Notes under the pieces: model-generated
What the model was told of the DNA's origin: nothing
What the model saw: the letters and a program-made list of their open reading frames with translations, nothing else
Database searches by the model: none
Translations under genes and position numbers: made by a program
Virus record (IMG/VR): IMGVR_UViG_3300049001_000044
Span: 1-64,000 of that record
Length of the DNA: 64,000 nt
Direction: 5' to 3' (one strand)
Part shown: positions 49,597-61,330 of the stretch, piece by piece
How the letters are laid out: each line of letters starts with the position of its first letter
Numbering within the stretch: position 1 is the first letter of the stretch

Positions 49597-50283
49597 ATGA
49601 AGAAAATCATCCTAGGCTCTGCCGTCTTTCTATTTACTGCCTCATCGTTCGCAAAAAGTGGATGTGAGGACTTCACTTACAACGGGGTGTTTCCAACCAC
49701 TAGGGACAAGGTCACCATCCTTTGCAAGAACGGCTTCGCTGTTGGTTACTCCACCGAGAAGAAGACTCTGTTGTGGGTAGTAGAGAGGATTGACCCTAAC
49801 GCCAAGTACACCATCAAGCATCGCCCATCCTTCCACAAAGACGACGCGCTTCCTCATGACGTTCAATCCAGTAATCAGGACTTCGTCGGTACAGGTTACG
49901 ACAAGGGCCACATGGTTCCATTTGAGGACATGTCCTACAGCAGGGAGTCCGCTTACGATAGCATGAGCCTAACCAATATCGTGCCACAGAACTTTGCGAA
50001 CAATAGAGGCGGATGGAAATCGCTGGAAATGTACGCGCGAAAAAGTGCGAGCTATGGAGTTGTGTACGTGGTGAGTGGCCCTATCTTCGAAGGCAAAATG
50101 GACTATCTCAACAAGCGCGTCCCTATCCCTACCTCGCTCTTTAAGGTCATCATCAATCCCAAGACAAAAAAGACCGAGGCATGGGTCCTACCTAATACGC
50201 CAATCTCCAGCTACGAGGTAGACCACTTCAAAACTACCCCTCAAGCAATTGGGAAGCTAGGAGTGCAAATCACCACCCCATGA
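49597..50283 (+). CDS. Secreted DNA/RNA non-specific endonuclease (NucA family)
   Basis: Signal peptide; GYDKGHM, TNIVPQ...NNRGGW; late promoter GTAAATA upstream. Confidence 0.9.
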   Translation: MKKIILGSAVFLFTASSFAKSGCEDFTYNGVFPTTRDKVTILCKNGFAVGYSTEKKTLLWVVERIDPNAKYTIKHRPSFHKDDALPHDVQSSNQDFVGTGYDKGHMVPFEDMSYSRESAYDSMSLTNIVPQNFANNRGGWKSLEMYARKSASYGVVYVVSGPIFEGKMDYLNKRVPIPTSLFKVIINPKTKKTEAWVLPNTPISSYEVDHFKTTPQAIGKLGVQITTP

Positions 50284-50368: not shown

Positions 50369-51184
50369 TTACGGTGTTACCGGCAATGCACGCTTGTGGA
50401 TTGTCTTCGAGAACTGGTCGATGATGCGCTGCTCTGAGGTCGAGCTGATCTCCTTGCCCTCTAGGTAATCGTCGATCTCGTCGTATGTCACCCCATAGGC
50501 CACTTCGTCTGGCTTGCCTGGGTCCAGATTCTCTAGGTCAGCAGTTGGGGTCTTGTTCACCAACTTATCTGGTGCGCCCAGCGCTTTTCCAATGGCCTTC
50601 ACCTGTCGTTTCGTCAGGCCAGCCAGAGGCATGATGTCAGCAAACCCATCACCGCCTTTCGTGAAGAAGCCCATCACTGCTTCGGCCGCATGGTCAGTAC
50701 CAATCACCAAGCCACCAGTTGCCCCAGCGATTGCATACTGCATGATCATCCGCTGTCGAGCCTTGATATTGCCCATCACGAAGTCTTCATGCTCAATGCT
50801 GTTGAACTTGACTTCGTTGTGGACTTCAAACAGGACAGCTTCGCTTGCACGTCCGATGTTGCAGGTCAACGTGATATCTGGCTGGATGAAGTTGAGAGCT
50901 GCCTGCGCATCCGCTTCGTCACGTTGAGTATGGTAAGGCAGACGGACAGCGATGAACTCTGCATCGTAGCCTTCCGACTTTAGTTTATAGATGGCAAGTT
51001 GTGCGAGCTTACCAGCAGTTGTCGAGTCGACACCACCAGAAATGCCCAGCGTGTAGGTGCGCTGGCCAGATTTCCGCAGATAGTCGGCGAGGAAGTCAAC
51101 ACGACGGTTGATCTCTTGGTCAACATCAATAACTGGTTTAACGTTCAACTCACGAATGATTGCGTCTTGGACTACTTTAAACAT
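50369..51184 (-). CDS. nadE: NH3-dependent NAD+ synthetase
   Basis: LGISGGVDST, GNIKARQRM, IGTDHAAE, GFFTKGGDG, KTPTADLE. Confidence 0.95.
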   Translation of the reverse strand: MFKVVQDAIIRELNVKPVIDVDQEINRRVDFLADYLRKSGQRTYTLGISGGVDSTTAGKLAQLAIYKLKSEGYDAEFIAVRLPYHTQRDEADAQAALNFIQPDITLTCNIGRASEAVLFEVHNEVKFNSIEHEDFVMGNIKARQRMIMQYAIAGATGGLVIGTDHAAEAVMGFFTKGGDGFADIMPLAGLTKRQVKAIGKALGAPDKLVNKTPTADLENLDPGKPDEVAYGVTYDEIDDYLEGKEISSTSEQRIIDQFSKTIHKRALPVTP

Positions 51185-51470
51185 TCTCTTGTTCCTTTTC
51201 AATTTGATTGGCGCATTGACGCATCAGATAGATGGCGTCGACAAAATCCCATTTGTTCCTGGGTAGTCTTGGGAGGGTGAAGCGAACACTCAATGCCCAG
51301 CGGTCGAAGTCAGCGATTTTGGCACCGACTTGGAACTCGCCGTACATGTTCACTCTCCACCTTCGCCCTTTACCAACGAGGTAGAACCAACGGGACTGGC
51401 GCTGTCCACTGCTCTCAGGCTTGAGGCCCGCCTTCTTGCACCAATCTGCCCATTGCTTAGGTAGCTTCAT
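51177..51470 (-). CDS. Hypothetical protein
   Basis: Overlap-coupled to nadE. Confidence 0.7.
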   Translation of the reverse strand: MKLPKQWADWCKKAGLKPESSGQRQSRWFYLVGKGRRWRVNMYGEFQVGAKIADFDRWALSVRFTLPRLPRNKWDFVDAIYLMRQCANQIEKEQENV

Positions 51471-51633: not shown

Positions 51634-51800
51634 CGCTTTAGCTTCTCGTATGCTGCCATCGCTGCTTGGGCTTCTTCAACGATGTTCTTAGTCAGGGACG
51701 CCAGGCCCCATCCACCACTTCGTGAGATGTTGCCAGTGAGAGAGGCAGCAATGAACTGCGCAATCTTCTCATTGTACTCGCTAATTGGAATGTGGCTCAC
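51630..51800 (-). CDS. Small hypothetical protein (56 aa)
   Basis: GTG start overlapping the upstream stop. Confidence 0.5.
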   Translation of the reverse strand: MSHIPISEYNEKIAQFIAASLTGNISRSGGWGLASLTKNIVEEAQAAMAAYEKLKR

Positions 51801-52342
51801 GAAGTAAGTTCCTTCAGAATGCGGATGGTGCGTTCACCATCGTTCGTGTCGTGTAAGATGCCGATACCACCCGCAGCAATCCATTCCTGGATATTGTCGT
51901 GGCGGTCATCGATGAGGATGTCACCCTTGTTCTTCACGTGCTTCCACTTGTCACGAGAGTAGGGACCAATCACGACAGGAATTTCGATGTGTGGGAAGCG
52001 GTCTGCCATCCAGTCGATCTTGTCTTTCTCTGCTGAGGGGACAGACGCACGACGAGGAATTGCAGTCAGCATCCTACGTGCTTTAGCTGGGGTCGCCATC
52101 ACCGCCTGCAGCAAGTCTTCTGCATACGGGGTGGTTGGCAGTTCGAAATACAGGCGATCCCACTTTGACAGGAACGACCACATTTCTGCGTCAGCGCCTG
52201 GACCGGCTTGGTGGGAGAAGGTTCGACCCATGTGAATGAAGACGAACGCGTCGAAGTCGGCAACGACGCCGTCCATATCGACGTTGATCTCATTTACGTT
52301 GGGATCAAACGTGGTGATTACTTGGGTTAGTAGATGTTCCAT
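51797..52342 (-). CDS. 5'(3')-deoxyribonucleotidase-like HAD phosphatase
   Basis: VDMDGVVADF, LTA, K, ILIDD. Confidence 0.9.
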   Translation of the reverse strand: MEHLLTQVITTFDPNVNEINVDMDGVVADFDAFVFIHMGRTFSHQAGPGADAEMWSFLSKWDRLYFELPTTPYAEDLLQAVMATPAKARRMLTAIPRRASVPSAEKDKIDWMADRFPHIEIPVVIGPYSRDKWKHVKNKGDILIDDRHDNIQEWIAAGGIGILHDTNDGERTIRILKELTS

Positions 52343-52443: not shown

Positions 52444-52519
52444 TGGTGCTGTAGAAGGGAATCGAACCCATGACCTCTTCCTTACCAAGAAAGTGCTCTA
52501 CCGACTGAGCTACTACAGC
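52444..52519 (-). tRNA. tRNA-Thr(GGT)
   Basis: Canonical cloverleaf, CCA. Confidence 0.95.
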
Positions 52520-52525
52520 ATGAGA

Positions 52526-52906
52526 TTATTTATGGGCTTCCATCCGTTCCCGGATATCAGCAAACGCTACCTCGAATTCATGCTCCGCTTTGAAGTATTC
52601 ATCTGCATAGTCCGCATATCCCACGGCGATATTGCTCGTACTACTTAATACACCAAATCGGTTCTTCACGATGCGAGCGAGTTGGCAGAGACGGTCGAGG
52701 TCCTCCACCGTCACCTTTGTCAGGACACGCGGTGGTTGCTCATTGCTCAAGAAGGCGTGCTCGTATTTCCAAGTAGCACGCGGCCACGCCTTCGCCTGGT
52801 TAGGATGCAGGATCTTGGGACCGAACTCCACGTGCCCATCCTCGATGTGGTTGTGCTCGAAGACGCCCTTGTCGTTCTTGCGAGTCCAAATGGTAATGGG
52901 CGTCAT
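52526..52906 (-). CDS. Hypothetical protein
   Basis: Overlap-coupled. Confidence 0.75.
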   Translation of the reverse strand: MTPITIWTRKNDKGVFEHNHIEDGHVEFGPKILHPNQAKAWPRATWKYEHAFLSNEQPPRVLTKVTVEDLDRLCQLARIVKNRFGVLSSTSNIAVGYADYADEYFKAEHEFEVAFADIRERMEAHK

Positions 52907-53637
52907 TCCTCCACCTCTTGAAAATCGGAGAGGTCCACATCTACTGACTTCTCTTTGTAGCCCAGCACCTTCGCGATTTGGATGAAGGCCTGCTTCACCA
53001 GCTCTTTGTGCGCCTCACGGCCACCATTCATGAACTGCTCAGCAGTCATCCAAACCACAGCACCGGTTTCGAAGTGCGGTTGGTTGAAGTCGAACTCATC
53101 CTTCACCTCGACAGCATAAAGAGCGAAGGTGTATTCCTTCTCGTCTTGAATCGTACCCTTCAGCACGTTGTAGACGGATTGTTCCTGGTATGTGGTGTTG
53201 TCCAGCTTCAGACCCAGCTCTTCTTCACCCTCACGAATTGCTGCGTGCTTTGAGGATTTGTCGGTAGGATCAACATACCCCTTGCTGATTTGCGGAAGAG
53301 GACCACCATATTTCGGGTCAGACGAAATCATGAACATCATACGCAGCTCCCTGCCATCGTGACGGTAAGGGATGATGCCTGCCTTCTCGACAGGTGGATG
53401 CCAAGTCCAGCAGCCACAGTACTTGCAACCCACTGGGTCCCAGTTCTCGTATCCATCGAAGTGACGGTAGTATGCGTGACCACAGTCGCATTTCGCATCG
53501 TCAGGGAAGTCAGGATTCATGCGCAGCTCGGTGCGCTCTACCATCACCTTCGTGCGAAGATATGGACCCGTGGTGTCAGCATCCGGCTCGGACGACAACA
53601 CCTTGTCTTGGTTTATGCAGTTGAAAATTCTTGCCAT
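52903..53637 (-). CDS. NUDIX hydrolase with N-terminal Cys/His zinc-binding domain
   Basis: CDCGHAYYRHF...CKYCGC, then KAGIIPY...KGYVD...AAIREGEEELGL. Confidence 0.88.
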   Translation of the reverse strand: MARIFNCINQDKVLSSEPDADTTGPYLRTKVMVERTELRMNPDFPDDAKCDCGHAYYRHFDGYENWDPVGCKYCGCWTWHPPVEKAGIIPYRHDGRELRMMFMISSDPKYGGPLPQISKGYVDPTDKSSKHAAIREGEEELGLKLDNTTYQEQSVYNVLKGTIQDEKEYTFALYAVEVKDEFDFNQPHFETGAVVWMTAEQFMNGGREAHKELVKQAFIQIAKVLGYKEKSVDVDLSDFQEVEE

Positions 53638-53687
53638 CGTTCCTCCTTTGTACTTGTTATTGTACAACGATGGCGATCGTGTTGAAA

Positions 53688-54608
53688 CTAAGTCCTGGTC
53701 TCCAACACTTTGGGATGTAAGCTGATTACGTTATCGACGTATTTCACTTGTCTTGTAAATCGATATCGATGCAAGATGTCGAATACCCTCTTGCTGGGGT
53801 ATTTGCCAAACTCAAGTCTGTCTCTTTGCGTTACGAGCTCAGACTTCTCATCGTATATTTCCTTCACTCGTTCGAAGCCGGTCATCTTGAACTTTTGTGG
53901 GATGACGTCGAACCCCGCTCTAGAGTACAAGTCGCATTTATTGGCGTACCCAGTCGAGGAACATCGTGCCGTCCTGAAGAATCTACGGAATGAACCGACT
54001 AACTCAGGATCATGTATGAAGAAGAATGGGATGATACTTCTTTGGGTATTTGTCGCGTAGCGAAGTAAACCCAAAATCGTGTAATTGACATTTGGACCTT
54101 CTGAGTAACAGTTACCGCTAAAGATGACGGTACCCTCAGTTACCAGCTCACTCATCTTCATGTGCGTGCAGATTTGCGGACTAGTACAGCTATGCGTTAA
54201 GACGTAGGACTCAAGCTCCCGTTCTATGAAGTCAATGATCTTGAAGTCTTTGAACTCAACCGCCAATCCATTCATGTCTACGAAAGTCTTCAGCGTTTCC
54301 AAGTCTTCAACATTGAGTACCTCACCGTCATCAGTCACATACTGCACCGACATTAGCTTGAATGGAACACCTGACTTCATCCAAGCGCAAACCATCGCTT
54401 GACTATCGACCCCTCCTGATACCATTAGAGTGAATGGTGCGGGATACTTATCAGCGATCCTTCTTACAGAATTAACGGCAGCCGTCAGTGGTGGTAGATC
54501 ATTCTCATCTACCACACTAAAGTCCATCACGTATGGGATAGATCGACTGGGCGTCTGAGATAACTTAAGGCCCCATCCCTTTTTCACCCAATCCAAAATC
54601 ACCCCCAT
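53688..54608 (-). CDS. PP-loop (adenine-nucleotide alpha-hydrolase) protein, start uncertain
   Basis: LMVSGGVDSQ PP-loop. Confidence 0.75.
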   Translation of the reverse strand: MGVILDWVKKGWGLKLSQTPSRSIPYVMDFSVVDENDLPPLTAAVNSVRRIADKYPAPFTLMVSGGVDSQAMVCAWMKSGVPFKLMSVQYVTDDGEVLNVEDLETLKTFVDMNGLAVEFKDFKIIDFIERELESYVLTHSCTSPQICTHMKMSELVTEGTVIFSGNCYSEGPNVNYTILGLLRYATNTQRSIIPFFFIHDPELVGSFRRFFRTARCSSTGYANKCDLYSRAGFDVIPQKFKMTGFERVKEIYDEKSELVTQRDRLEFGKYPSKRVFDILHRYRFTRQVKYVDNVISLHPKVLETRT

Positions 54609-54612
54609 ATCG

Positions 54613-56208
54613 TTACATGCACGCAACACCGGTGCAATAGCAGTCCATCTGTTTTGCGCTACCACAGTTGTGGCAAGCGGTACAGCCGTTCGTTGCGCAT
54701 GTTGTGACATTACAAGTACCGCCGGTCGCGTAAGGCGTGATCTTCAACTGTGGATCAACAGTTGGGTCGCTCTCGTCTAGCGTATCAGCAACAACCCACA
54801 TTCTAACTTGGTAGGGGACTTCTCCGCCTTCACGAAGGGAGAGAGTGAAATTGATGTCGAAGTATTTCCAAGTCGAACCATCTGTGATGTCGATCTTACC
54901 AAGTAGCAGGCCGTTGTCAAATGTCATGCCTTCAGGCAAGCCGTCGCAAGTTGCACTTGACACCGTTAGTCTGTTGAAGAGGTCGAAGCCCCACTCTTGC
55001 CCACTCTTGACCTTTAGCTCAGCCAGGGCGCCAACACCGACATCATATGGCTTGGTCTTGAATGTAGTGACTAGGTTAACGGACGAGGAGTATTTTGGAT
55101 CATCCAGATGAATCAAATTTCTGCGGTAGAAGCCCACTGTGCCAACGAAGGTTTGCACAAACGTATCTTCACTGATCGATTTGATAGCAATTTGCCCGTC
55201 GCTAGTAACAGCAGTGGCGAGATTATACGCAGTTGCTGCAGTATGGATCGCAGCTGCGATAGATGTTCCGGATACCAATCCATATCCACCACCAACCAGC
55301 GCGACGTAGATGTCTTCACCTGGTGCCCAGCCATCTAGCTGTCCACCATTCGTAGCGCCAGTAGTCAAGCTGGTCGCTGACGAGTAATTGGAGAAATCTG
55401 ATGGCATGAAATCCTGGCTATAAGAGCCGATCGTGGTCACCATATCCATGCCAGCAGGGGTCACATCGCCGATCTCAACTCCACTGTTACCTGCAGCGGC
55501 GACAGCGTAGACGCCGGCTTCGATAAGCTTGGCGATTTTGGATTCGATGAATGTGTTCTTAGCAATACCCCAGCTCATGTTCACGACAGAGGCGGTCTTT
55601 CCATTTGCCACAAAGTCAGAGATGATGGCATCGAATGCGTCAAGCAAATCACTCTGCAGAGTCTCGACGGAATTGTCGAACACCTTAACCACCTTGACAC
55701 TTGCAGACGTCATGCCGCATGTCTTACCAGCGATGACGCTTGCGAGAGATGTGCCGTGACCAGTGGTGTCAGTGAAGTCACTCGTGAACGAGTGCATGGT
55801 TTGAATCTTCGCATCCGCAAATTCAGGGTGTGTCAAGTCAATACCACTGTCCATGATATAGATGGTGACATTATTACCCAAGATAGGGTAGGTCTCTACA
55901 TCGGTGGAAAAGTCTGGGGTCATGATACTAGCGACCTTCCACCAATCCTTCGAGTCGGTATTTGAGAACTGTCCGTATTGGAAATCTGTACCTAGATCGA
56001 AACTTACACCCATCAGATTGATTGGGTTCGATTCGTTCTTAATAGCTGTCTCCACGATGTCAGTGACAGGCGGCTCAATGTCGGTGTCTACCAGATAAAC
56101 TTCTTCATAGTTCTGGTACTGCTTCACCACATTGCAGTTGTTTGCCTGGAGGTAAGCTTGGATATCTGCAAGGGTAGCGTCTTGCTTAAAGTCGACTAGG
56201 AATTTCAT
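54613..56208 (-). CDS. Subtilisin-family (S8) protease with Cys-rich C-terminal tail
   Basis: IYIMDSGID, GHGT, AAGNSG, SGTSIAA; C-terminal segment with 8 Cys. Confidence 0.92.
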   Translation of the reverse strand: MKFLVDFKQDATLADIQAYLQANNCNVVKQYQNYEEVYLVDTDIEPPVTDIVETAIKNESNPINLMGVSFDLGTDFQYGQFSNTDSKDWWKVASIMTPDFSTDVETYPILGNNVTIYIMDSGIDLTHPEFADAKIQTMHSFTSDFTDTTGHGTSLASVIAGKTCGMTSASVKVVKVFDNSVETLQSDLLDAFDAIISDFVANGKTASVVNMSWGIAKNTFIESKIAKLIEAGVYAVAAAGNSGVEIGDVTPAGMDMVTTIGSYSQDFMPSDFSNYSSATSLTTGATNGGQLDGWAPGEDIYVALVGGGYGLVSGTSIAAAIHTAATAYNLATAVTSDGQIAIKSISEDTFVQTFVGTVGFYRRNLIHLDDPKYSSSVNLVTTFKTKPYDVGVGALAELKVKSGQEWGFDLFNRLTVSSATCDGLPEGMTFDNGLLLGKIDITDGSTWKYFDINFTLSLREGGEVPYQVRMWVVADTLDESDPTVDPQLKITPYATGGTCNVTTCATNGCTACHNCGSAKQMDCYCTGVACM

Positions 56209-56225
56209 GGTGTCCTTATTTTGGT

Positions 56226-56453
56226 TTACCACTTGTTAAGTGGGCACTCAACGTTCAATAGCTTTGTCTTTGCCGTCATAAAGCACCCGCACTCCTTGCA
56301 AGTCTTCGTGAGCTTGATAAGTGAGGGGCACTCGACACAAATCTCGATGCGCTTCTTCGCGACATCTGTTGGTGCAAGCTGGCCTTGGACGCGTTCAGCA
56401 ACTTCTTCAGCAACTTCCTGCACTCTAGCCTTTAGTTTGTCTGCGAATGACAT
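56226..56453 (-). CDS. Small Cys-rich protein (DUF6171-like)
   Basis: RIEICVEC...CKECGCFMTAKT...CPLNKW. Confidence 0.85.
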   Translation of the reverse strand: MSFADKLKARVQEVAEEVAERVQGQLAPTDVAKKRIEICVECPSLIKLTKTCKECGCFMTAKTKLLNVECPLNKW

Positions 56454-56481
56454 GTTAAGCCTTCTATGGTTGATGGGATAT

Positions 56482-56949
56482 TTATTGGGCTAGCTTTCGA
56501 ATCTTCTCCGCACACGCGGACACGATGTGACGTTGGGAACGTCGACCCTTCTTGTTGAATTCCGCTTCAGTGAACCAAACAACTTCCTTGGTCTCATAGT
56601 GCGGTTTGCCGAAGTCGCGAACGTCATCGACCCGGCAGATCATGACAGTAAAAGGATACTTGGCGTCTAGCCCTTCCAACTCGCCCGTCCATCCCGTGGT
56701 TAGGGTACCATCCACGATGTTCGAACGACGAAGTCCAAGTTCTTCTTCGGCTTCCCTAACACCTGCAACTTCCTCAGTCTCTCCTGGGTCAATGCCACCC
56801 TTAGCAATCATGGGGTCTGGACCACCATAGGCCGCGTCGGACGAGATCATGAAAGCCATGCGAGGTTCGCCATTGGCTTCCAATACGTAGGGAATGCATC
56901 CTGCTTTCCCACGCTTCTTGGGTGCTTCGAAAAGTTGATGTAGTTTCAT
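56482..56949 (-). CDS. NUDIX hydrolase with capsid-targeting-like N-terminus
   Basis: MKLHQLFEA; KGGIDPGETEEVAGVREAEEELGL; late promoter at 56979. Confidence 0.9.
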   Translation of the reverse strand: MKLHQLFEAPKKRGKAGCIPYVLEANGEPRMAFMISSDAAYGGPDPMIAKGGIDPGETEEVAGVREAEEELGLRRSNIVDGTLTTGWTGELEGLDAKYPFTVMICRVDDVRDFGKPHYETKEVVWFTEAEFNKKGRRSQRHIVSACAEKIRKLAQ

Positions 56950-57003
56950 GTTGGGATGAGTGTAAGTGATAGTGAAGCTATTTATCCAGCGCATAGCTCA
57001 GGA

Positions 57004-57083
57004 CTTACCAGTGAGGCCCAGAGACCTCCACCACGTCACGATGTAGAAGCCCATAGACAACGAAGGGACCTCTCTGGGCCCCT
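57004..57083. repeat. Dispersed inverted-repeat module
   Basis: CTTACCAGTGAGGCCCAGAGACCTCC ... GGACCTCTCTGGGCCCC. Confidence 0.7.
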
Positions 57084-57145
57084 TGGAAAATGCGAACGCA
57101 AAAAGGCCCCTCCTCGAGAGGGGCCGGCTGGAGAAGGCCGCCGGA

Positions 57146-57436
57146 TTAGTGGACGGTCGGGGCTTCCCAGTGGGTGTTGCGGAACTTCGTGGCCGCCTTC
57201 TTCATCGACTTCAGGGCCGTCTCGATGTCCGTTTTCATGGTGACACCCTCAACGCCGATTTCTTTTGCGAAGGCAACCAGCTTGGCCTTGTTCGCTTCCT
57301 TCGAGGCGATCGGGCCGGCGTCGATGACGGACTGAACGTAGGTGTAACCGAAGCGGAAACCGCGGGGACCCGGTTGGACGTGGTTCGCGGCGGCGTTTTT
57401 CTTGGTGTTCTTCGATGCGGTAGCTGCGTTTGCCAT
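57146..57436 (-). CDS. GxRGFxFG-family paralog (domain only)
   Basis: GPRGFRFGYTYVQSVIDAG...EANKAKLVAFA, close to the 1467..1907 C-terminus. Confidence 0.9.
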   Translation of the reverse strand: MANAATASKNTKKNAAANHVQPGPRGFRFGYTYVQSVIDAGPIASKEANKAKLVAFAKEIGVEGVTMKTDIETALKSMKKAATKFRNTHWEAPTVH

Positions 57437-57495
57437 GGTCGTTCTCCTTTGAAAATTTCAGTTTACTTTCGGGTTTTACTTCGTTTGTTTCTGTT

Positions 57496-57571
57496 GATGA
57501 GGCTATAGTACCACAACCTGGGTGGATGTACACAGTAATTTGTGTAAAAGTTGTAACAGGTAGTTGTTACC
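57496..57571 (-). promoter_or_regulatory. Early promoter cassette
   Basis: GATGAGGCTATAGTACCAC...TGTACAC...TTGTAACAGGTAGTTGTTAC. Confidence 0.75.
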
Positions 57572-57689
57572 GCTAGGAAACATACGAACCGAAACGACCT
57601 CTATTATAGAAGGGACCTCCTCTATATAAGGAGCGCAGAAACGACAAGAGGAACCCGAAGGTTCCTCTCATTGATATGAATCACAAAAC

Positions 57690-58022
57690 TTACGCAGCTT
57701 TGTCGGGATACTGAGCGTCCAGCATCTCGATATAGCCATGGGGAGAAGTTCCTGGCTCAAGGTTGTGGACCTTGTTGAAGCCATTCTCCAGAGAGATCAT
57801 GCTTTCTGCTGGGGTTATTCCACCGGTATACTTACCGTCCCCTTTCTTGTGCATGAGCTCCTTTTCGCCAGGGTTGATGGAACCCCAGTTACCGTCGCGA
57901 GGGGTTCCACGTTCCATCACTGGCTCAACGAAGTATCGTTTGCCAGTGCGAAGGGAGCTCACGATGAATCTGCCTGTCTCATCAGTATTGGTGAGGAACT
58001 TCTTGGTGAAGTCAGCGTCCAT
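57690..58022 (-). CDS. Hypothetical protein
   Basis: RBS AAGGAG; 110 aa. Confidence 0.8.
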   Translation of the reverse strand: MDADFTKKFLTNTDETGRFIVSSLRTGKRYFVEPVMERGTPRDGNWGSINPGEKELMHKKGDGKYTGGITPAESMISLENGFNKVHNLEPGTSPHGYIEMLDAQYPDKAA

Positions 58023-58038
58023 GTGGTGCTCCTTGTGT

Positions 58039-58112
58039 TGGTACTCCCTAGTGGAATCGAACCACTGTGTCTGTCGAGTCAGGACAGTGCTCTACCATTG
58101 AGCTAAGGGAGT
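58039..58112 (-). tRNA. tRNA-Val(GAC)-like, atypical (A1-U72, U37)
   Basis: Cloverleaf; anticodon loop CUGACUC. Confidence 0.75.
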
Positions 58113-58125
58113 AGGGTTGAGAAAA

Positions 58126-58323
58126 TTATTTGGACTTCCTTACGTGCTTCTTACAGGAAGTGCGGTCAACGCATTCTAACTTTGACGCGTTGTGATGAAT
58201 TACTGCTTCGATGTTGAGAACGCTTTCGCTGGGAGTGCGACCACATCGTACACACGATCTGTTTTTCCAGAGAGGTGATTTGCCGTTGTGGACATTCCAC
58301 GAAGTGTCGGTGTCATTGATCAT
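58126..58323 (-). CDS. Small Cys-containing hypothetical protein
   Basis: CVRC...C....C. Confidence 0.6.
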   Translation of the reverse strand: MINDTDTSWNVHNGKSPLWKNRSCVRCGRTPSESVLNIEAVIHHNASKLECVDRTSCKKHVRKSK

Positions 58324-58400
58324 GGTAGGCCAAGTCGGATTCGAACCGACGATCTCGCGATTATGAGTCGCTTGCTTTAGGCCATCTAAGCTATTGGCCC
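58323..58400 (-). tRNA. tRNA-Ile2(CAT)
   Basis: GCGACUCAUAAUCGC anticodon arm as in bacterial Ile2. Confidence 0.85.
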
Positions 58401-58407
58401 CGTTGTT

Positions 58408-58590
58408 TGGTGTCTCCTGTGGGAATTGAACCCACTCTATTCATTCTTAGTAAATGACAGTGCCCTAAACCATCTCCACTCCACCCTCGCGGATGAGTAT
58501 CGGCCGATTCCAACAACCGAAATGATGAAGCTTTGAAAGGTTTAGTCCCGCTCTGCTCTAGAATCAGAGCAAGCCTTACACTAAGGAGAC
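58408..58590 (-). ncRNA. tRNA-like RNA with a 114-nt structured D-loop
   Basis: GUCUCCU/AGGAGAC acceptor plus ACCA, GUGU/GCAC D stem, UUCAAUU T loop; insertion 58464-58577. Confidence 0.75.
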
Positions 58591-58598
58591 GATGTTCT

Positions 58599-58728
58599 TG
58601 GCGCCGATGGATAGGATTCGAACCTACCGACCACCCTCGAGATAGGAGATAACCATCCACGGGCGGTTGCAATACAACAAAGATTGCGGACGATGTTTTA
58701 GGTGCTCTAACCACTGAGCTACATCGGC
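58599..58728 (-). ncRNA. tRNA-Y RNA chimera: tRNA acceptor, D and T arms with a permuted Y module replacing the anticodon arm
   Basis: GCCGAUG/CAUCGGC-G-CCA; insert AUCGUCCGC-AAUCU-UUG-UUGU-AUU-GCAA[C]CGC-CC-GUGGAUGGU-UAUCU. Confidence 0.75.
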
Positions 58729-58779
58729 ATTTTGGAAGTGATGAGTAATTATACTCTGTAGTGCATGCTACTAAAACTG

Positions 58780-58855
58780 TGGTGGTGAGAGTGGGAATCG
58801 AACCCACCTGTTCTTCCTTATGAGGGAAGTGCATAAACCTCTCTGCCATCTCACC
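58780..58855 (-). tRNA. tRNA-Met(CAT)
   Basis: Cloverleaf, loop CUCAUAA; Met versus Ile2 not certain. Confidence 0.8.
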
Positions 58856-58860
58856 ATGCT

Positions 58861-58935
58861 TGGACCCTCCGATTGGATTCGAACCAACGTCTGTCGCTTT
58901 AGAAGAGCGATGCATTTCCGCTATGCTACAGAGGG
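58861..58935 (-). tRNA. tRNA-Arg(TCT)
   Basis: Cloverleaf, loop CUUCUAA. Confidence 0.9.
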
Positions 58936-58941
58936 ATTGTT

Positions 58942-59013
58942 TGGAGCCTCGAACTGGAGTCGAACCAGTCATTTGACCTTCGGACGGTCAATGCTAAGTC
59001 CCTTAGTCGAGAC
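58942..59013 (-). tRNA. Compact atypical tRNA, anticodon CCG (Arg)
   Basis: 7-bp acceptor, no 8/9 linker, 4-bp D stem with 5-nt loop, 6-bp anticodon stem, 3-nt variable loop. Confidence 0.6.
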
Positions 59014-59173
59014 AAACTTCTTCGAACTTACCTGCCTCGATGGCGTCAAGCGCGCGGTTAATCGCGGCGGCTATCTGTTCAGGGGTTGCGTTTGGATTGG
59101 TGCCAGGAAAGATGTTGAATTTCCTAACGTCCATCTCAACCAAACGCGCATGCAGTTTAGTAAGTTCGGTCAT
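59003..59173 (-). CDS. Small hypothetical protein (56 aa)
   Basis: MTELTKLHARLVEMDVRKFNIFPG...; stop lies inside the 5' end of the compact tRNA. Confidence 0.55.
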   Translation of the reverse strand: MTELTKLHARLVEMDVRKFNIFPGTNPNATPEQIAAAINRALDAIEAGKFEEVCLD

Positions 59174-59199
59174 TTAAAGTTCCAAAGTAAGAAAGGAGA

Positions 59200-59272
59200 G
59201 CCAACAAAAGAGTGGTAGACGGGATTGGGTTTGAGTAAAAGTCAAAGATAACCATCGTACCTGTCGGTTGGC
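59200..59272 (-). ncRNA. Minimal 73-nt Y RNA
   Basis: GCCAA[C]CGA-CA-GGUA-C-GAUGG-UUAUCU, pyrimidine-rich loop, then CCGUC-UACC-ACUCUU-UUG-UUGGC. Confidence 0.78.
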
Positions 59273-59277
59273 AAACT

Positions 59278-59351
59278 TGGTGCCCAATGTAGGAATCGAA
59301 CCTACGCCTGTTGATTACGAAACAACTAGACTACCACTATCCTAAGTGGGC
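59278..59351 (-). tRNA. tRNA-Thr(CGT)
   Basis: Cloverleaf, loop UUCGUAA. Confidence 0.85.
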
Positions 59352-59356
59352 AAATC

Positions 59357-59429
59357 TGGTACCGCGTGAAGGAGTCGAACCTTCTTAATCGGGCTTCGTA
59401 GACCCAACACCGGTTCCGCCGGCCGCGGT
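59357..59429 (-). tRNA. Compact atypical tRNA, anticodon ACG (Arg)
   Basis: Same architecture as 58942..59013: CCGG/CCGG D stem with 5-nt loop, 6-bp anticodon stem. Confidence 0.6.
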
Positions 59430-59612
59430 ATTGTCTTGTGTATCCAGTTCATCCACACCGTTAAAGAGCCACTCACTGCAGTCTTCGCTTAAGTGCATGC
59501 CTGGGATTTCTACTGCTGTTCTGTTGTCGTCATCATCTACGTGAATGATGACGATTGGTCCTGCAATTCCTACGATACCTAGTTCGAACATTCTAGTCAT
59601 GCCACTCACCAT
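59385..59612 (-). CDS. Hypothetical protein (3' end overlaps the compact tRNA)
   Basis: Acidic ORF filling the gap; start uncertain. Confidence 0.45.
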   Translation of the reverse strand: MVSGMTRMFELGIVGIAGPIVIIHVDDDDNRTAVEIPGMHLSEDCSEWLFNGVDELDTQDNTAAGGTGVGSTKPD

Positions 59613-59904
59613 AACGGCAGTGCCACAGTTCGTGACCTATAATCGAAAGGCGTTGTTCATCGTACATGAAGCGTTGTGGCATAACGTAGATAACGCACTT
59701 CTTCTCAACTGGATAGAAGGCGTTGCAGCCATTTGCTTCGTACTGTACACCAAGCTTGTTGCATGTCTCGGTGATTTTGTTGTCAGGAACGATCACGATC
59801 TCAGTCGTGAAGTTAGGATCATCCCTCGTATGCATCAGTGGCTTTGGCGAATTGTCGCAAGCGGACAGTGCTAGGAAGGAGAGAAGAATTGCAAGTCGTT
59901 TCAT
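59593..59904 (-). CDS. Lipoprotein
   Basis: LSAC lipobox; HELWHC motif. Confidence 0.85.
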   Translation of the reverse strand: MKRLAILLSFLALSACDNSPKPLMHTRDDPNFTTEIVIVPDNKITETCNKLGVQYEANGCNAFYPVEKKCVIYVMPQRFMYDEQRLSIIGHELWHCRYGEWHD

Positions 59905-59949
59905 GATGACCTCCAGGTTTGTGAAGGTATTTATCAGGCCGACTGATTG

Positions 59950-60023
59950 TGGAGTCCCAGGCAGGAATCGAACCCGCGTCTGTGAGGTTGCAGCTCACCG
60001 TCTTACCATTGGACCACTGGGAC
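59950..60023 (-). tRNA. tRNA-Cys(GCA)
   Basis: Cloverleaf, U73. Confidence 0.92.
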
Positions 60024-60029
60024 ATTGTT

Positions 60030-60105
60030 TGGTACACGAGGTCGGACTCGAACCGACGATAGCCCACTTGTAAGGAGGGTGATTTAGCCGCTAATCTACT
60101 CGTGC
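60030..60105 (-). tRNA. tRNA-Val(TAC)
   Basis: Cloverleaf, loop CUUACAA. Confidence 0.9.
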
Positions 60106-60113
60106 ATTGTGAT

Positions 60114-60189
60114 TGGACCCGCGGAGAGGGTTCGAACCTCCGACCTCTACGTTCGTAGCGTAGTGCTCTTCCAACTGAGCTACCGCGAG
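60114..60189 (-). tRNA. tRNA-Arg(ACG), canonical
   Basis: Cloverleaf, loop CUACGAA. Confidence 0.92.
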
Positions 60190-60195
60190 TTAGTT

Positions 60196-60268
60196 TGGCA
60201 ACGGTGTAGAGAGTCGAACTCTATCCGATCTGGGTCAGAGCCAGACGTGCATTCCAATGCTCACCGCA
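60196..60268 (-). tRNA. tRNA-Gln(CTG)
   Basis: Cloverleaf, loop CUCUGAC. Confidence 0.88.
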
Positions 60269-60275
60269 ATTGTTC

Positions 60276-60686
60276 TTAAATTATCTTTTTCCATTCATCA
60301 TCGAAATCTCCGACTTCGATAATTCGTGGATTTGGAAATGATTTATCAAATTGACGCGCTGTAAAGTCCACAACATACATGCCAACTTGAACAGCTGTAT
60401 GGCCATCACCTTCGCCATACTCTTTAGGAATGTCATTCCATTTTCTATTTGTTGCTGCTTCACCAGTGATAAACGTCGAGTGAATGCCTCTGTCATTTAA
60501 CCAATCAATGAAAGTATTCGACACCATCGAGCATGTTCCATTTTCATCTTCTAGCTCTCTTAAAGGAGCGCCCCATTCTTTACGGCCTTTCTCACCATCA
60601 AATTCTTTTTTGAATTCATTGGCAAGTTTTACTAACTCTTGGTAAGTCGGACTATGAGAAGATTCAAAGAGCTCTCTAATTTTCAT
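60276..60686 (-). CDS. AT-rich hypothetical protein with capsid-targeting-like N-terminus
   Basis: MKIRELFES; GTCSMVS...GDGHTAV...VVDFTARQF; late promoter at 60712. Confidence 0.85.
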   Translation of the reverse strand: MKIRELFESSHSPTYQELVKLANEFKKEFDGEKGRKEWGAPLRELEDENGTCSMVSNTFIDWLNDRGIHSTFITGEAATNRKWNDIPKEYGEGDGHTAVQVGMYVVDFTARQFDKSFPNPRIIEVGDFDDEWKKII

Positions 60687-60720
60687 GCTTATACTCCTAA
60701 TTTTGATGGAGTATTTATGT

Positions 60721-60793
60721 TGGCAACGGTGTAGAGAATCGAACTCTATCCAGTCTGGTTCAAAGCCAGATGTACCTACCTAGGTTCACCGCA
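60721..60793 (-). tRNA. tRNA-Gln(TTG)
   Basis: Near-duplicate of 60196..60268; loop CUUUGAA. Confidence 0.88.
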
Positions 60794-60922
60794 ATTGTTC
60801 TTTTAAGAAATTTACTTTCAGAAACTGTATTGAATGCTGTCAAGCCGCGGGTTCCTATTAACGAGGATCAAACGACGTGAATTTTTTAAGCATACAATTG
60901 AACTTATCTACAGGACGATGCT

Positions 60923-61084
60923 ATGAACAAACCCTTGACCGATGAGCTTCTAGATGAGCTGGAAAGCAAACTCACCGAGCTTCTTACGGCGGAACTCGAT
61001 CATTTTGAGCTGATACCCATCGATGAATTCTCAAACGAGTTCATCATGTCACATGACACCGATTATAGATGTAAGGAGGAGTAA
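60923..61084 (+). CDS. Small acidic protein antisense to the tRNA array
   Basis: MNKPLTDELLDELESKL...; AGGA RBS and TACAAT upstream. Confidence 0.5.
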   Translation: MNKPLTDELLDELESKLTELLTAELDHFELIPIDEFSNEFIMSHDTDYRCKEE

Positions 61085-61085
61085 A

Positions 61086-61161
61086 TGGTGGATCCTCAGG
61101 GAATCGAACCCTGCAATGTCTGGTTAAAAGCCAGGTGCCTAAACCGATCGGCCTAAGATCC
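61086..61161 (-). tRNA. tRNA-Lys(TTT)
   Basis: Cloverleaf, loop CUUUUAA. Confidence 0.9.
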
Positions 61162-61166
61162 ATGTT

Positions 61167-61245
61167 TGGTAGAGGGTCTCGGAATCGAACCGAGTTCTTA
61201 TGCTCTTCAGGCATACGCTGGAATGACCACACTAGCTCACCCTCC
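61167..61245 (-). tRNA. tRNA-Phe(GAA)
   Basis: Cloverleaf, loop CUGAAGA. Confidence 0.85.
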
Positions 61246-61254
61246 ATTGAATTT

Positions 61255-61330
61255 TGGTGCCGCCAACTGGTAACGATCCAGTCTCTCCTGTTTTTCAGAC
61301 AAGCGCTTTCACCTGATTAGCTTTAGCGGC
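61255..61330 (-). tRNA. tRNA-Phe(GAA), second copy with atypical T loop
   Basis: Loop CUGAAAA; T loop AUCGUUA. Confidence 0.85.

What the first reader, a model, noticed from the sequence alone, without database searches (positions are those of the whole stretch)
53688..56453. Subtilase with a Cys-rich tail, PP-loop enzyme and Cys-rich small protein: RiPP-like operon
Three adjacent genes: a small CxxC-rich protein, an S8 protease ending in GGTCNVTTCATNGCTACHNCGSAKQMDCYCTGVACM (8 Cys), and a PP-loop ATPase. The tail looks like a core peptide fused to its own protease, with the PP-loop enzyme as a possible modifier (adenylation-based cyclisation or sulfur insertion). A metal-binding or virion-maturation role is an alternative.
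Basis: inference. Interest (0 to 1): 0.6.

Follow-up and report, generated by a model that had tools for sequence, protein, structure and literature searches.

The report
Phage subtilase paired with PP-loop enzyme
Three co-transcribed late genes of a 343-kb T4-like phage encode a subtilisin-type protease ending in a small cysteine knot, an asparagine-synthetase-like ATP enzyme and a zinc-ribbon protein; the protease/ATP-enzyme pair recurs in dozens of uncultured phages, has no described function, and the evidence does not favour a peptide-antibiotic (RiPP) factory.

Summary
In detail: three genes lie on the minus strand. They are a 75-aa DUF6171 zinc-ribbon protein, a 531-aa S8 subtilase with an 8-Cys tail, and a 306-aa PP-loop ATPase.

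The genes co-occur widely. All 47 unique close relatives of the subtilase in IMG/VR have the PP-loop gene beside it, in three gene orders.

The RiPP interpretation is only partly supported:
- The PP-loop enzyme is an AsnB/beta-lactam-synthetase-type amide synthetase that lacks the glutaminase domain.
- It pairs equally with 19 tail-less subtilases, one of them in this same genome.
- Other Cys-tailed subtilases pair with a short QueC-like PP-loop enzyme instead.
- All 46 unique tails have an even Cys number and a fixed C..C..C..C..CxC framework. Ser/Thr are not enriched.
- The tail is never a free-standing ORF. It can be internal or followed by self-cleaving S74 or Hint domains.

So the tail reads as a disulfide-knotted mini-domain. 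The conserved unit is protease plus PP-loop enzyme, transcribed from T4-type late promoters.

The most likely mechanism, by inference only, is that the PP-loop enzyme covalently modifies its partner protease, as Cap9 and QatC modify their partner proteins. The function is untested, and the module appears undescribed.

The parts
56479..56486 (-). AATAAATA, a T4-type late-promoter-like word 25 nt upstream of the small gene's ATG
   Evidence: all 9 ATAAATA sites in the window lie upstream of a gene or tRNA start, mostly 20-30 nt away; the genome has 62 sites, against 4-24 for permuted words, and 46 of the 62 have an ORF start 8-49 nt downstream; the word lies 5-60 nt upstream of a module gene in 43/48 related loci, against 2-16/48 for nine control words.
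56226..56453 (-). Small DUF6171-family zinc-ribbon protein (75 aa): an N-terminal helix followed by six invariant Cys
   Evidence: The family is very broad: 14,668 cluster representatives.
54613..56208 (-). S8 subtilase of proteinase-K type, 531 aa plus stop
   Evidence: The AF2 model has mean pLDDT 82.8 and is confident for residues 1-480.
55954..56208 (-). N-terminal alpha/beta domain of the subtilase (residues 1 to about 85), in the position of a subtilase propeptide
   Evidence: pLDDT 86-95 over most of it, with secondary structure E-H-E-E-E; it is conserved in 33 relatives and followed by an invariant WWK. Its identity as an I9 propeptide was not tested.
55219..55878 (-). S8 catalytic domain; catalytic D120, H151, S316 and oxyanion-hole N241 (531-aa numbering)
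54790..55026 (-). Beta-sandwich domain (residues 395-473) carrying an LPxG...G motif
   Evidence: (strands 395-473, pLDDT 85-90). Its likeness to Ig-like or He_PIG domains rests on my own knowledge and was not confirmed by Pfam.
54715..54789 (-). Low-confidence linker holding the conserved D-P-x-[LIV] motif (DESDPTVDPQLKITPYATGGT)
   Evidence: the motif 'DDPxLxIxL' is conserved in most class A relatives; pLDDT falls below 50 from residue 484.
54616..54714 (-). C-terminal 33-residue tail with 8 Cys (the cysteine knot)
   Evidence: Even Cys count in 46/46 unique tails. Framework C..C..C..C..CxC. Of 29 class A tails, 28 end 0-3 residues after the last Cys.
53688..54608 (-). AsnB-type PP-loop ATP pyrophosphatase (306 aa plus stop) with no glutaminase domain; its start lies 4 nt after the subtilase stop
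54402..54419 (-). PP-loop motif SGGVDS
   Evidence: S, G, G, D and S are invariant in 25 relatives.

Best explanation
**What it is.** The three genes are one late-transcribed operon of a T4-like jumbo phage. They are one version ("class A") of a phage-only module whose conserved core is a gene pair: a proteinase-K-type subtilase and a PP-loop enzyme that activates carboxylates.

- *The subtilase* is a multi-domain protein with no obvious signal peptide (by inspection). In order it has a propeptide-like N-domain, an intact catalytic domain, a beta-sandwich, a conserved linker and a terminal knot of 6-14 Cys.
- *The knot* is most likely a disulfide-bonded mini-domain that stabilises the protease or helps it bind once it is outside the reducing cytoplasm, either on the virion or after lysis. 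It is most likely not a RiPP core.
- *The PP-loop protein* has the synthetase domain of asparagine synthetase B and beta-lactam synthetase. It therefore most likely adenylates a carboxylate and forms an amide bond.

**Most likely mechanism.** Because this enzyme stays with and co-diverges with its subtilase whether or not a knot is present, its most likely substrate is the partner subtilase itself, at a terminus or an acidic side chain, or a product of that subtilase. This parallels the QueC-like PP-loop enzymes Cap9 and QatC: Cap9 is shown, and QatC proposed, to modify the protein encoded beside it.

**The small protein.** The DUF6171 zinc-ribbon protein goes with the knot rather than with the PP-loop enzyme. 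It may help the knot fold or pair its thiols.

**Shown versus inferred.**
- Shown: gene structure, folds, co-occurrence, co-divergence, Cys parity, promoter words.
- Inferred: disulfides, extracellular or virion location, the substrate of the PP-loop enzyme, the role of the small protein.
For: **Pairing of subtilase and PP-loop gene**
- 62 loci were found from the PP-loop side and 69 from the S8 side.
- All 47 unique class A subtilases have the long PP-loop gene adjacent. 50 of 52 pairs are on the same strand, and in 34 of 52 pairs the gap is 250 nt or less.
- Divergence of the two genes is correlated: Spearman 0.85, with 0 of 999 Mantel permutations as high.
- Two genomes carry both a class A and a class B pair, and each PP-loop gene sits beside the subtilase of its own class.
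- Tandem duplications copy the pair as a unit.
- A third subtilase class is paired with a short QueC-like PP-loop gene 11-41 nt upstream in all 8 loci that have upstream sequence. The same short family directly follows the class B subtilase in this genome.

**Fold of the PP-loop protein**
- AF2 model: mean pLDDT 90.5.
- VIA-align Z-scores: 15.0 to AsnB (274 residues aligned), 14.6 to human ASNS, 12.7 to beta-lactam synthetase, 11.9 to carbapenam synthetase. Other PP-loop enzymes score 10.3 or less and match only the ~150-180-residue core.

**The knot as a domain**
- The Cys count is even in 46/46 unique tails: 4 (1), 6 (23), 8 (19), 10 (2), 14 (1).
- Gly is about twice as frequent as in the rest of the protein, Leu/Ile/Val are depleted, and Ser/Thr are not enriched.
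- In L104 the knot is internal. In other relatives it is followed by a Peptidase_S74 domain (28 bits, above the gathering score of 22) or by Hint-like domains.
- No free-standing ORF encodes such a tail.

**Late expression and other roles**
- The word ATAAATA lies 25 nt upstream of the operon's first ATG, and in the same relative position in 43/48 related loci against 2-16/48 for control words.
- The genome has a T4 Gp23 capsid protein and a gp21-type protease, so the subtilase is not the only candidate for the prohead protease.

**The small gene follows the knot**
- It is present in most loci whose subtilase has a knot.
- It is absent from all 3 class A loci without a knot and from all 19 class B loci.

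**Precedent for a PP-loop enzyme acting on its partner protein**
- bioRxiv 10.1101/2025.04.06.647259 and PMC13279940.
Against: - No experiment or model links the PP-loop enzyme physically to the subtilase.
- The one complex prediction gave no answer, so it counts neither way.
- AF2 gives no confident fold for the tail (pLDDT below 50 for residues 484-531). The disulfide knot therefore rests on Cys parity and composition only.
- A protein without an obvious signal peptide, made in a reducing cytoplasm, cannot form disulfides until it is released.
- Co-divergence is partly explained by the shared ancestry of the phages.
- The module sits among tRNA and nucleotide/NAD-metabolism genes, far from the structural genes at about 220-240 kb.
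- Late-promoter words also precede a tRNA gene here, so they do not prove a structural role.
Confidence: 0.45

Rival explanations
1. **RiPP-like or toxin-like peptide.** The subtilase cuts its own linker at the conserved DDPxL motif and releases the Cys-rich tail as a peptide of about 30-45 residues. The peptide is then tailored. Within many tails the only carboxylate available to an AsnB-type enzyme is the C-terminal one, so the PP-loop enzyme would amidate or cyclise the C-terminus. Sulfotransferase, oxygenase and GNAT enzymes would be optional tailoring steps.
For: - There is a conserved linear motif in a low-confidence linker just before the tail.
- The loops vary on a fixed Cys framework.
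- Tandem copies carry different tails.
- In 28/29 class A tails the sequence ends 0-3 residues after the last Cys. The S74 and Hint add-ons, if self-cleaving as in their families (my knowledge), would regenerate a C-terminus at that same point.
- Stf0-like sulfotransferase, GNAT and 2OG-oxygenase genes are recurrent neighbours.
- From my own knowledge, AsnB-like enzymes amidate the C-terminus of some thiopeptides and cyclise lasso peptides.
Against: - The PP-loop family pairs just as strictly with tail-less subtilases (class B, and L023, L111, L115).
- Cys-tailed class C subtilases lack this enzyme.
- Even Cys parity in 46/46 tails points to Cys-Cys pairing, not to thioether or azoline chemistry.
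- Ser/Thr are not enriched.
- Five of 29 tails have no Asp or Glu, which excludes a lasso-type isopeptide.
- The tail is no more variable than the rest of the C-terminal half of the protein.
- The knot is internal in L104.
- No stand-alone precursor ORF exists.
- No known RiPP maturase family turned up in the neighbouring genes that were scanned.
Confidence: 0.15
2. **Metal-binding tail.** The Cys-rich tail is a zinc, copper or metallothionein-like cluster that folds in the cytoplasm, and the DUF6171 zinc ribbon acts as a metal chaperone. The PP-loop enzyme works independently of the tail.
For: - The composition is very high in Cys and Gly, with CxC and CxxC elements. Some tails look like metallothioneins (L020, L029).
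- There is no obvious signal peptide (by inspection), so the protein folds in a reducing cytoplasm.
- The partner small protein is itself Cys-rich.
Against: - Counts of 6, 10 and 14 Cys do not fit sites built from four Cys, and there are no regular CxxC knuckle pairs.
- Loop lengths vary widely between relatives.
- His is rare in the tails (0.9%).
- The strict even parity is what disulfide pairing predicts.
Confidence: 0.15
3. **Common third substrate.** The subtilase and the PP-loop enzyme do not touch each other. They act in sequence on something else, for example a host envelope or cell-wall component around the time of lysis, or a host protein or peptide that is first cut and then amidated.
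For: - Both are under late-type promoter words.
- Class C subtilases sit directly upstream of a secreted SleB-type cell-wall hydrolase.
- From my own knowledge, AsnB-family enzymes amidate peptidoglycan precursors in some bacteria.
- The fold of the PP-loop protein alone does not say what its substrate is.
Against: - Two unrelated PP-loop families (AsnB-like and QueC-like) are found as partners of the subtilase. That is easier to explain if the protease itself is the common element.
- In the window and many other loci the two genes are nearly contiguous, consistent with translational coupling.
- The PP-loop protein lacks a signal peptide and needs ATP, so it cannot act outside the cell.
Confidence: 0.2
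4. **Plain metabolic gene.** The PP-loop protein is an ammonia-dependent asparagine synthetase, and its position next to the protease is only inherited gene order.
For: - The best structural match is asparagine synthetase B.
- There is a weak hit to TIGR01536 (E 0.02).
- The neighbours include NAD synthetase, two NUDIX genes and a nucleotidase.
Against: - No Pfam Asn_synthase hit appears in any of the 25 members scanned.
- In the profile alignment, the AsnB loop T322-T323-I-R325 aligns to the invariant T-S-P-Q, so Arg325 is replaced by Gln. From my own knowledge, Arg325 is needed to form beta-aspartyl-AMP.
- The pair is kept in three gene orders and in many different neighbourhoods.
- The family is essentially absent from 185,579 prokaryote species genomes: two weak hits only.
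Confidence: 0.05

Closest known systems
Asparagine synthetase B, beta-lactam synthetase, carbapenam synthetase (AsnB-type PP-loop synthetase domain)
   Same: The fold matches over nearly the whole protein: Z 15.0, 12.7 and 11.9, with 252-274 residues aligned. The SGGxDS PP-loop is present.
   Different: There is no N-terminal glutaminase domain. No Pfam Asn_synthase hit appears. The substrate loop differs, with AsnB Arg325 replaced by an invariant Gln. The family is found only in phages.
Cap9-CdnD (type IV CBASS) and QatC-QatB: QueC-like PP-loop enzymes that act on the N-terminus of the protein encoded beside them (shown for Cap9, proposed for QatC)
   Same: A PP-loop ATP enzyme is genetically locked to one partner protein. 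Some subtilases of this group are paired with a QueC-like PP-loop protein.
   Different: The window's enzyme is AsnB-like, not QueC-like. The partner is a protease. The genes are in phages, not in bacterial defence islands, and there is no PADLOC hit beyond a generic subtilase model. No modification has been shown.
Lasso-peptide machinery (AsnB-like cyclase C, leader protease B2, small recognition protein B1)
   Same: It has the same three formal parts: an AsnB-like ATP enzyme, a protease and a small protein of about 80 aa.
   Different: The protease here is a serine S8 enzyme, not a transglutaminase-like Cys protease. The small protein is a zinc ribbon, not a PqqD-like domain. The cyclase-like protein is half the usual size. 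No precursor gene was found. Five of 29 tails lack any Asp or Glu to accept an isopeptide bond.
Proteinase K and PCSK9-type subtilases with C-terminal Cys-rich domains
   Same: The catalytic domain is closest to proteinase K and PCSK9 (E down to 2e-19, TM 0.84 by target). The architecture is an N-terminal pro-like domain, a catalytic domain and Cys-rich C-terminal parts.
   Different: There is no obvious signal peptide (by inspection). The tail is only 27-59 residues long and unlike the PCSK9 C-terminal domain. The gene is phage-encoded and paired with a PP-loop enzyme.
Small disulfide-rich mini-proteins (knottins, hevein-like modules, conotoxin-type frameworks)
   Same: The length is about 30-45 residues with 6-8 Cys in even number. 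Gly is enriched, aliphatic residues are few, and the loops vary on a fixed Cys framework.
   Different: No sequence or structural match was obtained. The tail is always fused to a subtilase. The disulfides have not been demonstrated.
Phage tail-spike and fibre proteins with a C-terminal Peptidase_S74 intramolecular chaperone
   Same: Two relatives (L007, L009) carry an S74 domain directly after the knot, beginning at the conserved Ser-Asp.
   Different: The window's protein has no S74 domain, and no fibre-like repeat or beta-helix lies upstream of it. Whether the subtilase is a virion protein is unknown.

Membership tests
Peptidase S8 (subtilase), proteinase-K type | Asp-His-Ser catalytic triad and oxyanion Asn in the S8 order, with a Pfam PF00082 match above threshold | tested here: met
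   PF00082 scores 69.9 bits against a cut-off of 21.8. D120, H151, N241 and S316 are invariant in 33 sequences. Foldseek's top hits are proteinase-K-type enzymes.
Peptidase S8 (subtilase), proteinase-K type | N-terminal I9-type propeptide that is cleaved off autocatalytically | tested here: inconclusive
   A confident alpha/beta N-domain lies in the right place. There is no Pfam Inhibitor_I9 hit, and cleavage cannot be tested here.
PP-loop ATP pyrophosphatase superfamily | SGGxDS motif in a Rossmann-like fold | tested here: met
   SGGVDS lies at 54402-54419 and is invariant in 25 relatives. The fold matches many PP-loop enzymes.
Asparagine synthetase B family (Pfam Asn_synthase, TIGR01536) | Sequence-model match above threshold | tested here: not met
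   No Asn_synthase hit in any of 25 members at E 0.1 or better. TIGR01536 scores 13.8 bits against a cut-off of 267.
Asparagine synthetase B family (Pfam Asn_synthase, TIGR01536) | N-terminal class II glutaminase domain | tested here: not met
   The protein is 306 aa. The structural alignment starts at AsnB residue 119 and covers the synthetase domain.
Asparagine synthetase B family (Pfam Asn_synthase, TIGR01536) | Synthetase-domain fold, including the C-terminal helical part | tested here: met
   Z 15.0 with 274 residues aligned to 1ct9. This stands clear of other PP-loop classes, which score Z 10.3 or less.
Asparagine synthetase B family (Pfam Asn_synthase, TIGR01536) | Aspartate-binding loop Thr322-Thr323-x-Arg325 (role of the residues from my own knowledge) | tested here: not met
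   hhalign places the invariant T-S-P-Q of the family on AsnB T-T-I-R, so Arg is replaced by Gln. The alignment itself is weak (probability 25%, E 7.8e-4).
RiPP biosynthetic cluster | A precursor with a leader or follower part and a core that is released by a protease | not testable with these tools
   There is a conserved linker motif before the tail, but no free-standing precursor ORF. Cleavage needs mass spectrometry.
RiPP biosynthetic cluster | A modifying enzyme that is specific for the core and co-occurs with it | tested here: not met
   The PP-loop family occurs with tail-less subtilases (class B, L023, L111, L115). Tails also occur without it (class C).
Lasso peptide system | An Asp or Glu acceptor at core positions 7-9 for the macrolactam | tested here: not met
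   Five of 29 tails contain no Asp or Glu. The window's tail has a single Asp, at tail position 24.
Lanthipeptide, thiopeptide or sactipeptide-type Cys chemistry | A dehydratase/cyclase, YcaO or radical-SAM maturase in the cluster, and Ser/Thr-rich cores | tested here: not met
   No such family appears among the recurrent neighbours that were scanned. Ser is 7.6% in tails against 9.1% elsewhere, and Thr 8.6% against 8.7%. Cys parity is even in 46/46 tails.
DUF6171 (PF19668) | Pfam match above the gathering score | tested here: inconclusive
   The window's protein scores 24.4 bits, below the cut-off of 27. Relatives found with its family profile pass at up to 60.6 bits. The nearest ESM Atlas clusters carry DUF6171.
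T4-type prohead (head-maturation) protease | Being the phage's capsid-maturation protease | tested here: inconclusive
   The genome encodes a Peptidase_S77 (gp21-type) protease at 224.7-225.1 kb, next to Gp23. The S8 gene lies about 165 kb away. A role in head maturation was not tested directly.

The most novel reading that the evidence does not exclude
T4-like phages may encode a previously unrecognised protein-modification system. In it, a dedicated PP-loop enzyme (AsnB-like or QueC-like) would covalently modify its partner late-expressed subtilase through an ATP-dependent amide bond, for example by capping, cyclising or ligating a terminus. This would be a phage counterpart of Cap9/QatC-type protein modification. 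In class A the target would also carry a diversifying cysteine knot, handled by a DUF6171 zinc-ribbon helper.
Probability: 0.3. Interest if true: 0.8.

Novelty: new variant of a known kind. Interest (0 to 1): 0.6.

Why it matters
If the PP-loop enzyme really modifies its partner protease, this would extend the recently discovered idea that PP-loop enzymes work as protein-modifying enzymes. Until now that idea rests on bacterial defence systems (Cap9, QatC). Here it would apply to phages, and to the AsnB branch of the superfamily.

It would also give a first functional handle on three things:
- a phage-only enzyme family represented by several hundred known sequences;
- the very large DUF6171 family, with at least 14,668 sequence clusters and no literature found;
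- a set of late-expressed phage subtilases whose targets are unknown.

The cysteine-knot tails form a natural library of small, variable, probably disulfide-stabilised modules. Even if the function proves mundane, the analysis shows that the RiPP label should not be applied to these loci on composition alone.

Tried and rejected
**Searches that found nothing useful**
- DNA and protein searches of cultured phage genomes found no near relative of the region. They found no relative of either PP-loop class, only generic S8 hits in Bacillus phages. The Tsamsa S8 gene proved to be a bare catalytic domain in a non-structural region.
- Sequence searches of the PDB with the PP-loop protein and with its profile gave only chance hits.
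- The ESM Atlas search with the tail alone gave no usable hit.
- Longer DUF6171 proteins were scanned for informative domain fusions. Only DUF6171 repeats turned up.
- The sulfotransferase-like accessory gene is absent from the window's genome.
- The exact word TATAAATA occurs only once in the window. The looser T4-like form NATAAATA was the informative one.
- Literature searches for DUF6171, and for AsnB plus subtilisin plus phage, found nothing relevant.

**Complex prediction**
- The complex prediction with the PP-loop protein, subtilase residues 385-531 and the small protein gave no answer (score 0.11, mark 0.32). It is evidence neither for nor against binding.

**An apparent lead that was an artefact**
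- A GNAT gene seemed to be present in the window, but this was a clustering artefact from the ORF antisense to the small gene.

**Ideas considered and rejected**
- The subtilase as prohead protease: unlikely, because a gp21-type protease is present.
- A lasso peptide: there are no acceptor residues.
- A sulfur-transfer PP-loop enzyme: the fold is AsnB-type.
- A known defence or anti-defence family: no specific PADLOC hit.

**Not used**
- The sequencing-read tools, because expression in metagenomes would not separate the hypotheses.

Full report
**1. What is in the window.**

The window is the first 64 kb of a 343,229-bp IMG/VR phage record with direct terminal repeats. The phage is T4-like. 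It encodes a Gp23 major capsid protein (312 bits) and a gp21-type prohead protease (Peptidase_S77, 84.7 bits) at about 220-225 kb.

The finding's three ORFs are real and lie on the minus strand. Two starts need refining:
- The small gene starts at ATG 56453.
- The subtilase most likely starts at ATG 56208, behind an AAGGA ribosome-binding site, giving 531 aa as in database protein P0121.
- The PP-loop gene most likely starts at ATG 54608, four bases after the subtilase stop, giving 306 aa as in P0001.

An AATAAATA word lies 25 nt upstream of the small gene's ATG. A strong terminator-like hairpin lies further upstream, at 57105-57125.

**2. The three proteins.**

*Small protein.* It belongs to the DUF6171 family, with an N-terminal helix and six invariant Cys.

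*Subtilase.*
- It matches Peptidase_S8 at 3e-19, and the catalytic residues are invariant.
- The AF2 model is confident for residues 1-480. These cover a propeptide-like N-domain, a proteinase-K/PCSK9-like catalytic domain and a beta-sandwich at residues 395-473.
- The model has no confidence (pLDDT below 50) for residues 484-531, which include the 8-Cys tail.

*PP-loop protein.*
- It has no Pfam, PHROG or NCBIfam family.
- It folds confidently, with mean pLDDT 90.5.
- It matches the synthetase domains of asparagine synthetase B (Z 15.0, 274 residues), human ASNS (14.6), beta-lactam synthetase (12.7), carbapenam synthetase (11.9) and TsnB9 (10.6).
- Sulfur-transfer, tRNA-modifying, NAD and QueC-type PP-loop enzymes match only the core, at Z 10.3 or less.
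- It lacks the glutaminase domain. In a weak profile alignment, AsnB's T322-T323-I-R325 loop is replaced by an invariant T-S-P-Q.

**3. The module elsewhere.**

The PP-loop family has at least 200 metagenomic relatives, all unnamed. Its nearest ESM Atlas clusters are 95-100% viral, and BFVD hits are uncharacterised phage proteins. Among genomes of 185,579 prokaryote species there are only two weak hits.

IMG/VR was scanned from the PP-loop side (62 loci) and from the subtilase side (69 loci), and the loci were scored with my own HMMs. The results:
- All 47 unique close ("class A") subtilases have the PP-loop gene beside them.
- Three gene orders occur: small-S8-PP as in the window, S8-small-PP, and small-PP-S8.
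- 50 of 52 pairs lie on one strand, most with gaps of a few bases to about 250 nt.
- The surrounding genes differ between loci.
- Some contigs carry two or three tandem copies.

**4. Why the PP-loop enzyme is not a tail-specific modifier.**

- *Class B.* A second class has 19 unique pairs of a ~333-aa PP-loop protein with a 570-620-aa subtilase. These subtilases have no Cys tail and no DUF6171 gene. Instead they share a conserved C-terminus ending in [IL]-K in 15 of 19 sequences, at a median identity of 38%. The window's own genome carries such a pair at about 104.9-107.4 kb.
- *Tail lost, PP-loop kept.* Three class A subtilases (L023, L111, L115) have lost the Cys tail. All three keep the PP-loop gene and lack the small gene.
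- *Class C.* A third class has 9 unique subtilases of about 500 aa with a tail of 4-6 Cys. They lack the AsnB-like enzyme. Instead, a short QueC-like PP-loop gene (29-35 bits, cut-off 22) lies 11-41 nt upstream in all 8 loci that have upstream sequence, and a secreted SleB-type cell-wall hydrolase lies just downstream.
- *The short family recurs.* It also directly follows the class B subtilase in this genome and in L046, and lies within 0.9-4 kb in several class A loci.
- *Co-divergence.* Distances between PP-loop proteins and between their subtilases are correlated: Spearman 0.85, with 0 of 999 permutations as high. In the two genomes that hold both class A and class B, each enzyme sits beside the subtilase of its own class.

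The invariant element is therefore "subtilase plus a PP-loop carboxylate-activating enzyme". The tail and the small gene are add-ons.

**5. What the tail is.**

- All 46 unique terminal Cys clusters have an even Cys number: 4 (1), 6 (23), 8 (19), 10 (2) and 14 (1).
- The framework is C..C..C..C..CxC, with extra Cys added in pairs.
- Gly is doubled, Leu/Ile/Val are depleted, and Ser/Thr are not enriched.
- The closest pair of homologs is about 57% identical in the tail (hand count from the alignment) against 60% overall. The whole C-terminal half also diverges fast. The tail is therefore not specially hypervariable.
- No locus, and nowhere in the genome, has a free-standing small ORF with such a tail.
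- In L104 the 8-Cys knot is internal and followed by a ~165-aa domain.
- In two relatives the knot is followed by a Peptidase_S74 self-cleaving chaperone.
- In four relatives it is followed by a Hint/intein-like domain whose first Cys comes right after the knot.

Even parity is what intradomain disulfide pairing predicts. It is not what thioether, azoline or four-Cys metal-site chemistry predicts. I therefore read the tail as a small disulfide-knotted domain. Because AF2 gives no fold for it, this remains an inference.

**6. Timing of expression.**

- The word ATAAATA occurs 62 times in the genome, against 4-24 times for words of the same composition. In 46 of the 62 cases an ORF starts 8-49 nt downstream.
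- All nine sites in the window precede a gene or a tRNA.
- The word lies 5-60 nt upstream of a module gene in 43 of 48 related loci, against 2-16 of 48 for nine control words.
- By established knowledge of T4 and T4-like cyanophages, (T/N)ATAAATA is the late promoter recognised by gp55.

The module is therefore probably a late transcription unit. That fits a protein meant for the virion or for the time of lysis, but it does not prove either.

**7. The small protein.**

A profile of 26 small proteins finds 14,668 cluster representatives, far more than the module has. Other members sit next to glycosyltransferases with no subtilase nearby. Within this module the small gene tracks the knot:
- It is present in most loci whose subtilase has a knot.
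- It is absent from all three knot-less class A loci and from all class B loci.
- These cases are not phylogenetically independent.

Its role, whether as a helper for thiol pairing or folding or as an adaptor, is a guess.

**8. Mechanism and comparison with known systems.**

AsnB-type enzymes adenylate a carboxylate and pass it to ammonia or to an amine. QueC-type enzymes do the same chemistry. QueC-like Cap9 conjugates a deazaguanine to the N-terminus of its partner protein CdnD. QatC is proposed to modify the N-terminus of its partner QatB in an analogous way (bioRxiv 10.1101/2025.04.06.647259; PMC13279940).

Two different PP-loop families are found locked to subtilases in T4-like phages. 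The most economical reading is that the subtilase is their substrate or an obligatory partner. A survey of the QueC family does not mention proteases, and I found no paper on DUF6171.

Rivals kept open:
- a RiPP-like released knot with C-terminal amidation or cyclisation;
- a metal-binding tail;
- a common third substrate;
- a plain asparagine synthetase.

The module does not meet the tested defining features of lasso, lanthipeptide-type or AsnB families (see the membership table).

**9. Verdict.**

The RiPP interpretation is partly supported as to linkage and not supported as to mechanism.

The module looks undescribed. Its parts have known folds, so I file it as a new variant of known kinds rather than as categorically new. 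The function is untested. The decisive experiment is mass spectrometry of the subtilase expressed with and without its PP-loop partner.

Noticed in passing
window 52444-62320 (minus strand): An array of 26 tRNA genes, including two tRNA-Met(CAT)-type genes and several duplicates. The module is embedded at its edge.
   Followed up: no
window 62813, 60718, 59934, 56985, 56485, 52533, 32452 (minus strand); 22257, 32484 (plus strand): NATAAATA words upstream of gene or tRNA starts, mostly 20-30 nt away. These are probably the phage's T4-type late promoters. There are 62 in the genome, dense in the structural region.
   Followed up: partly
G000:C1 about 104270-107413 (outside the window; locus L074): A second module in the same genome: a class B PP-loop protein (316 aa), a tail-less subtilase (524 aa) and a short QueC-like PP-loop protein (196 aa). 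It is preceded by late-promoter words at 107919 and 107425.
   Followed up: partly
window 50369-51202, 51797-52342, 52903-53667, 56482-56994 (minus strand): NAD synthetase (203.6 bits), an NT5C-type deoxynucleotidase and two NUDIX hydrolases flank the module. This suggests a cluster for NAD or nucleotide metabolism. The NUDIX protein at 52903-53667 has an extra Cys/His-rich N-terminal segment (phrog_24688).
   Followed up: no
window 49597-50283 (plus strand): A DNA/RNA non-specific endonuclease (Endonuclease_NS, 145.7 bits) with an apparent N-terminal signal peptide. It lies on the strand opposite to its neighbours.
   Followed up: no
L134, L137, L139-L141, L143, L144 (IMG/VR): Class C loci with a conserved gene order: short QueC-like PP-loop gene, Cys-tailed subtilase, secreted SleB-type cell-wall hydrolase (Hydrolase_2, 92.7 bits). 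Next to these lie a PhoH-like gene (by sequence motif only, not scanned) and a PD-(D/E)XK nuclease gene.
   Followed up: partly
L036/L129, L094, L132, L133; L007, L009; L104: Some subtilases carry a Hint/intein-like domain (C|CFTPETLI...ANGI[LM]) or a Peptidase_S74 domain directly after the knot. One has a further ~165-aa Cys-free domain there.
   Followed up: partly
L075, L076 (Logan contigs): A DUF6171 small gene sits between Glyco_transf_17 and Glycos_transf_1 genes, near a GTP cyclohydrolase I gene and with no subtilase. This shows the small-protein family serves other enzyme sets too.
   Followed up: no
L003 8662-9501; L006 5107-5967 and 8510-9418; L016, L017, L021, L040, L089: A gene of about 280-330 aa carrying a PRSGS motif gives weak hits to Stf0 sulfotransferase (15.6-16.5 bits, cut-off 22). 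It follows the subtilase in about nine class A loci and is duplicated together with the pair. It is absent from the window's genome.
   Followed up: partly
L072 (Bdellovibrio MAG contig), L073 (Spirochaetaceae MAG): These are the only two hits of the PP-loop family in 185,579 prokaryote species genomes. Both are weak and possibly of phage origin. No subtilase was seen in the 8 kb held for L072.
   Followed up: no
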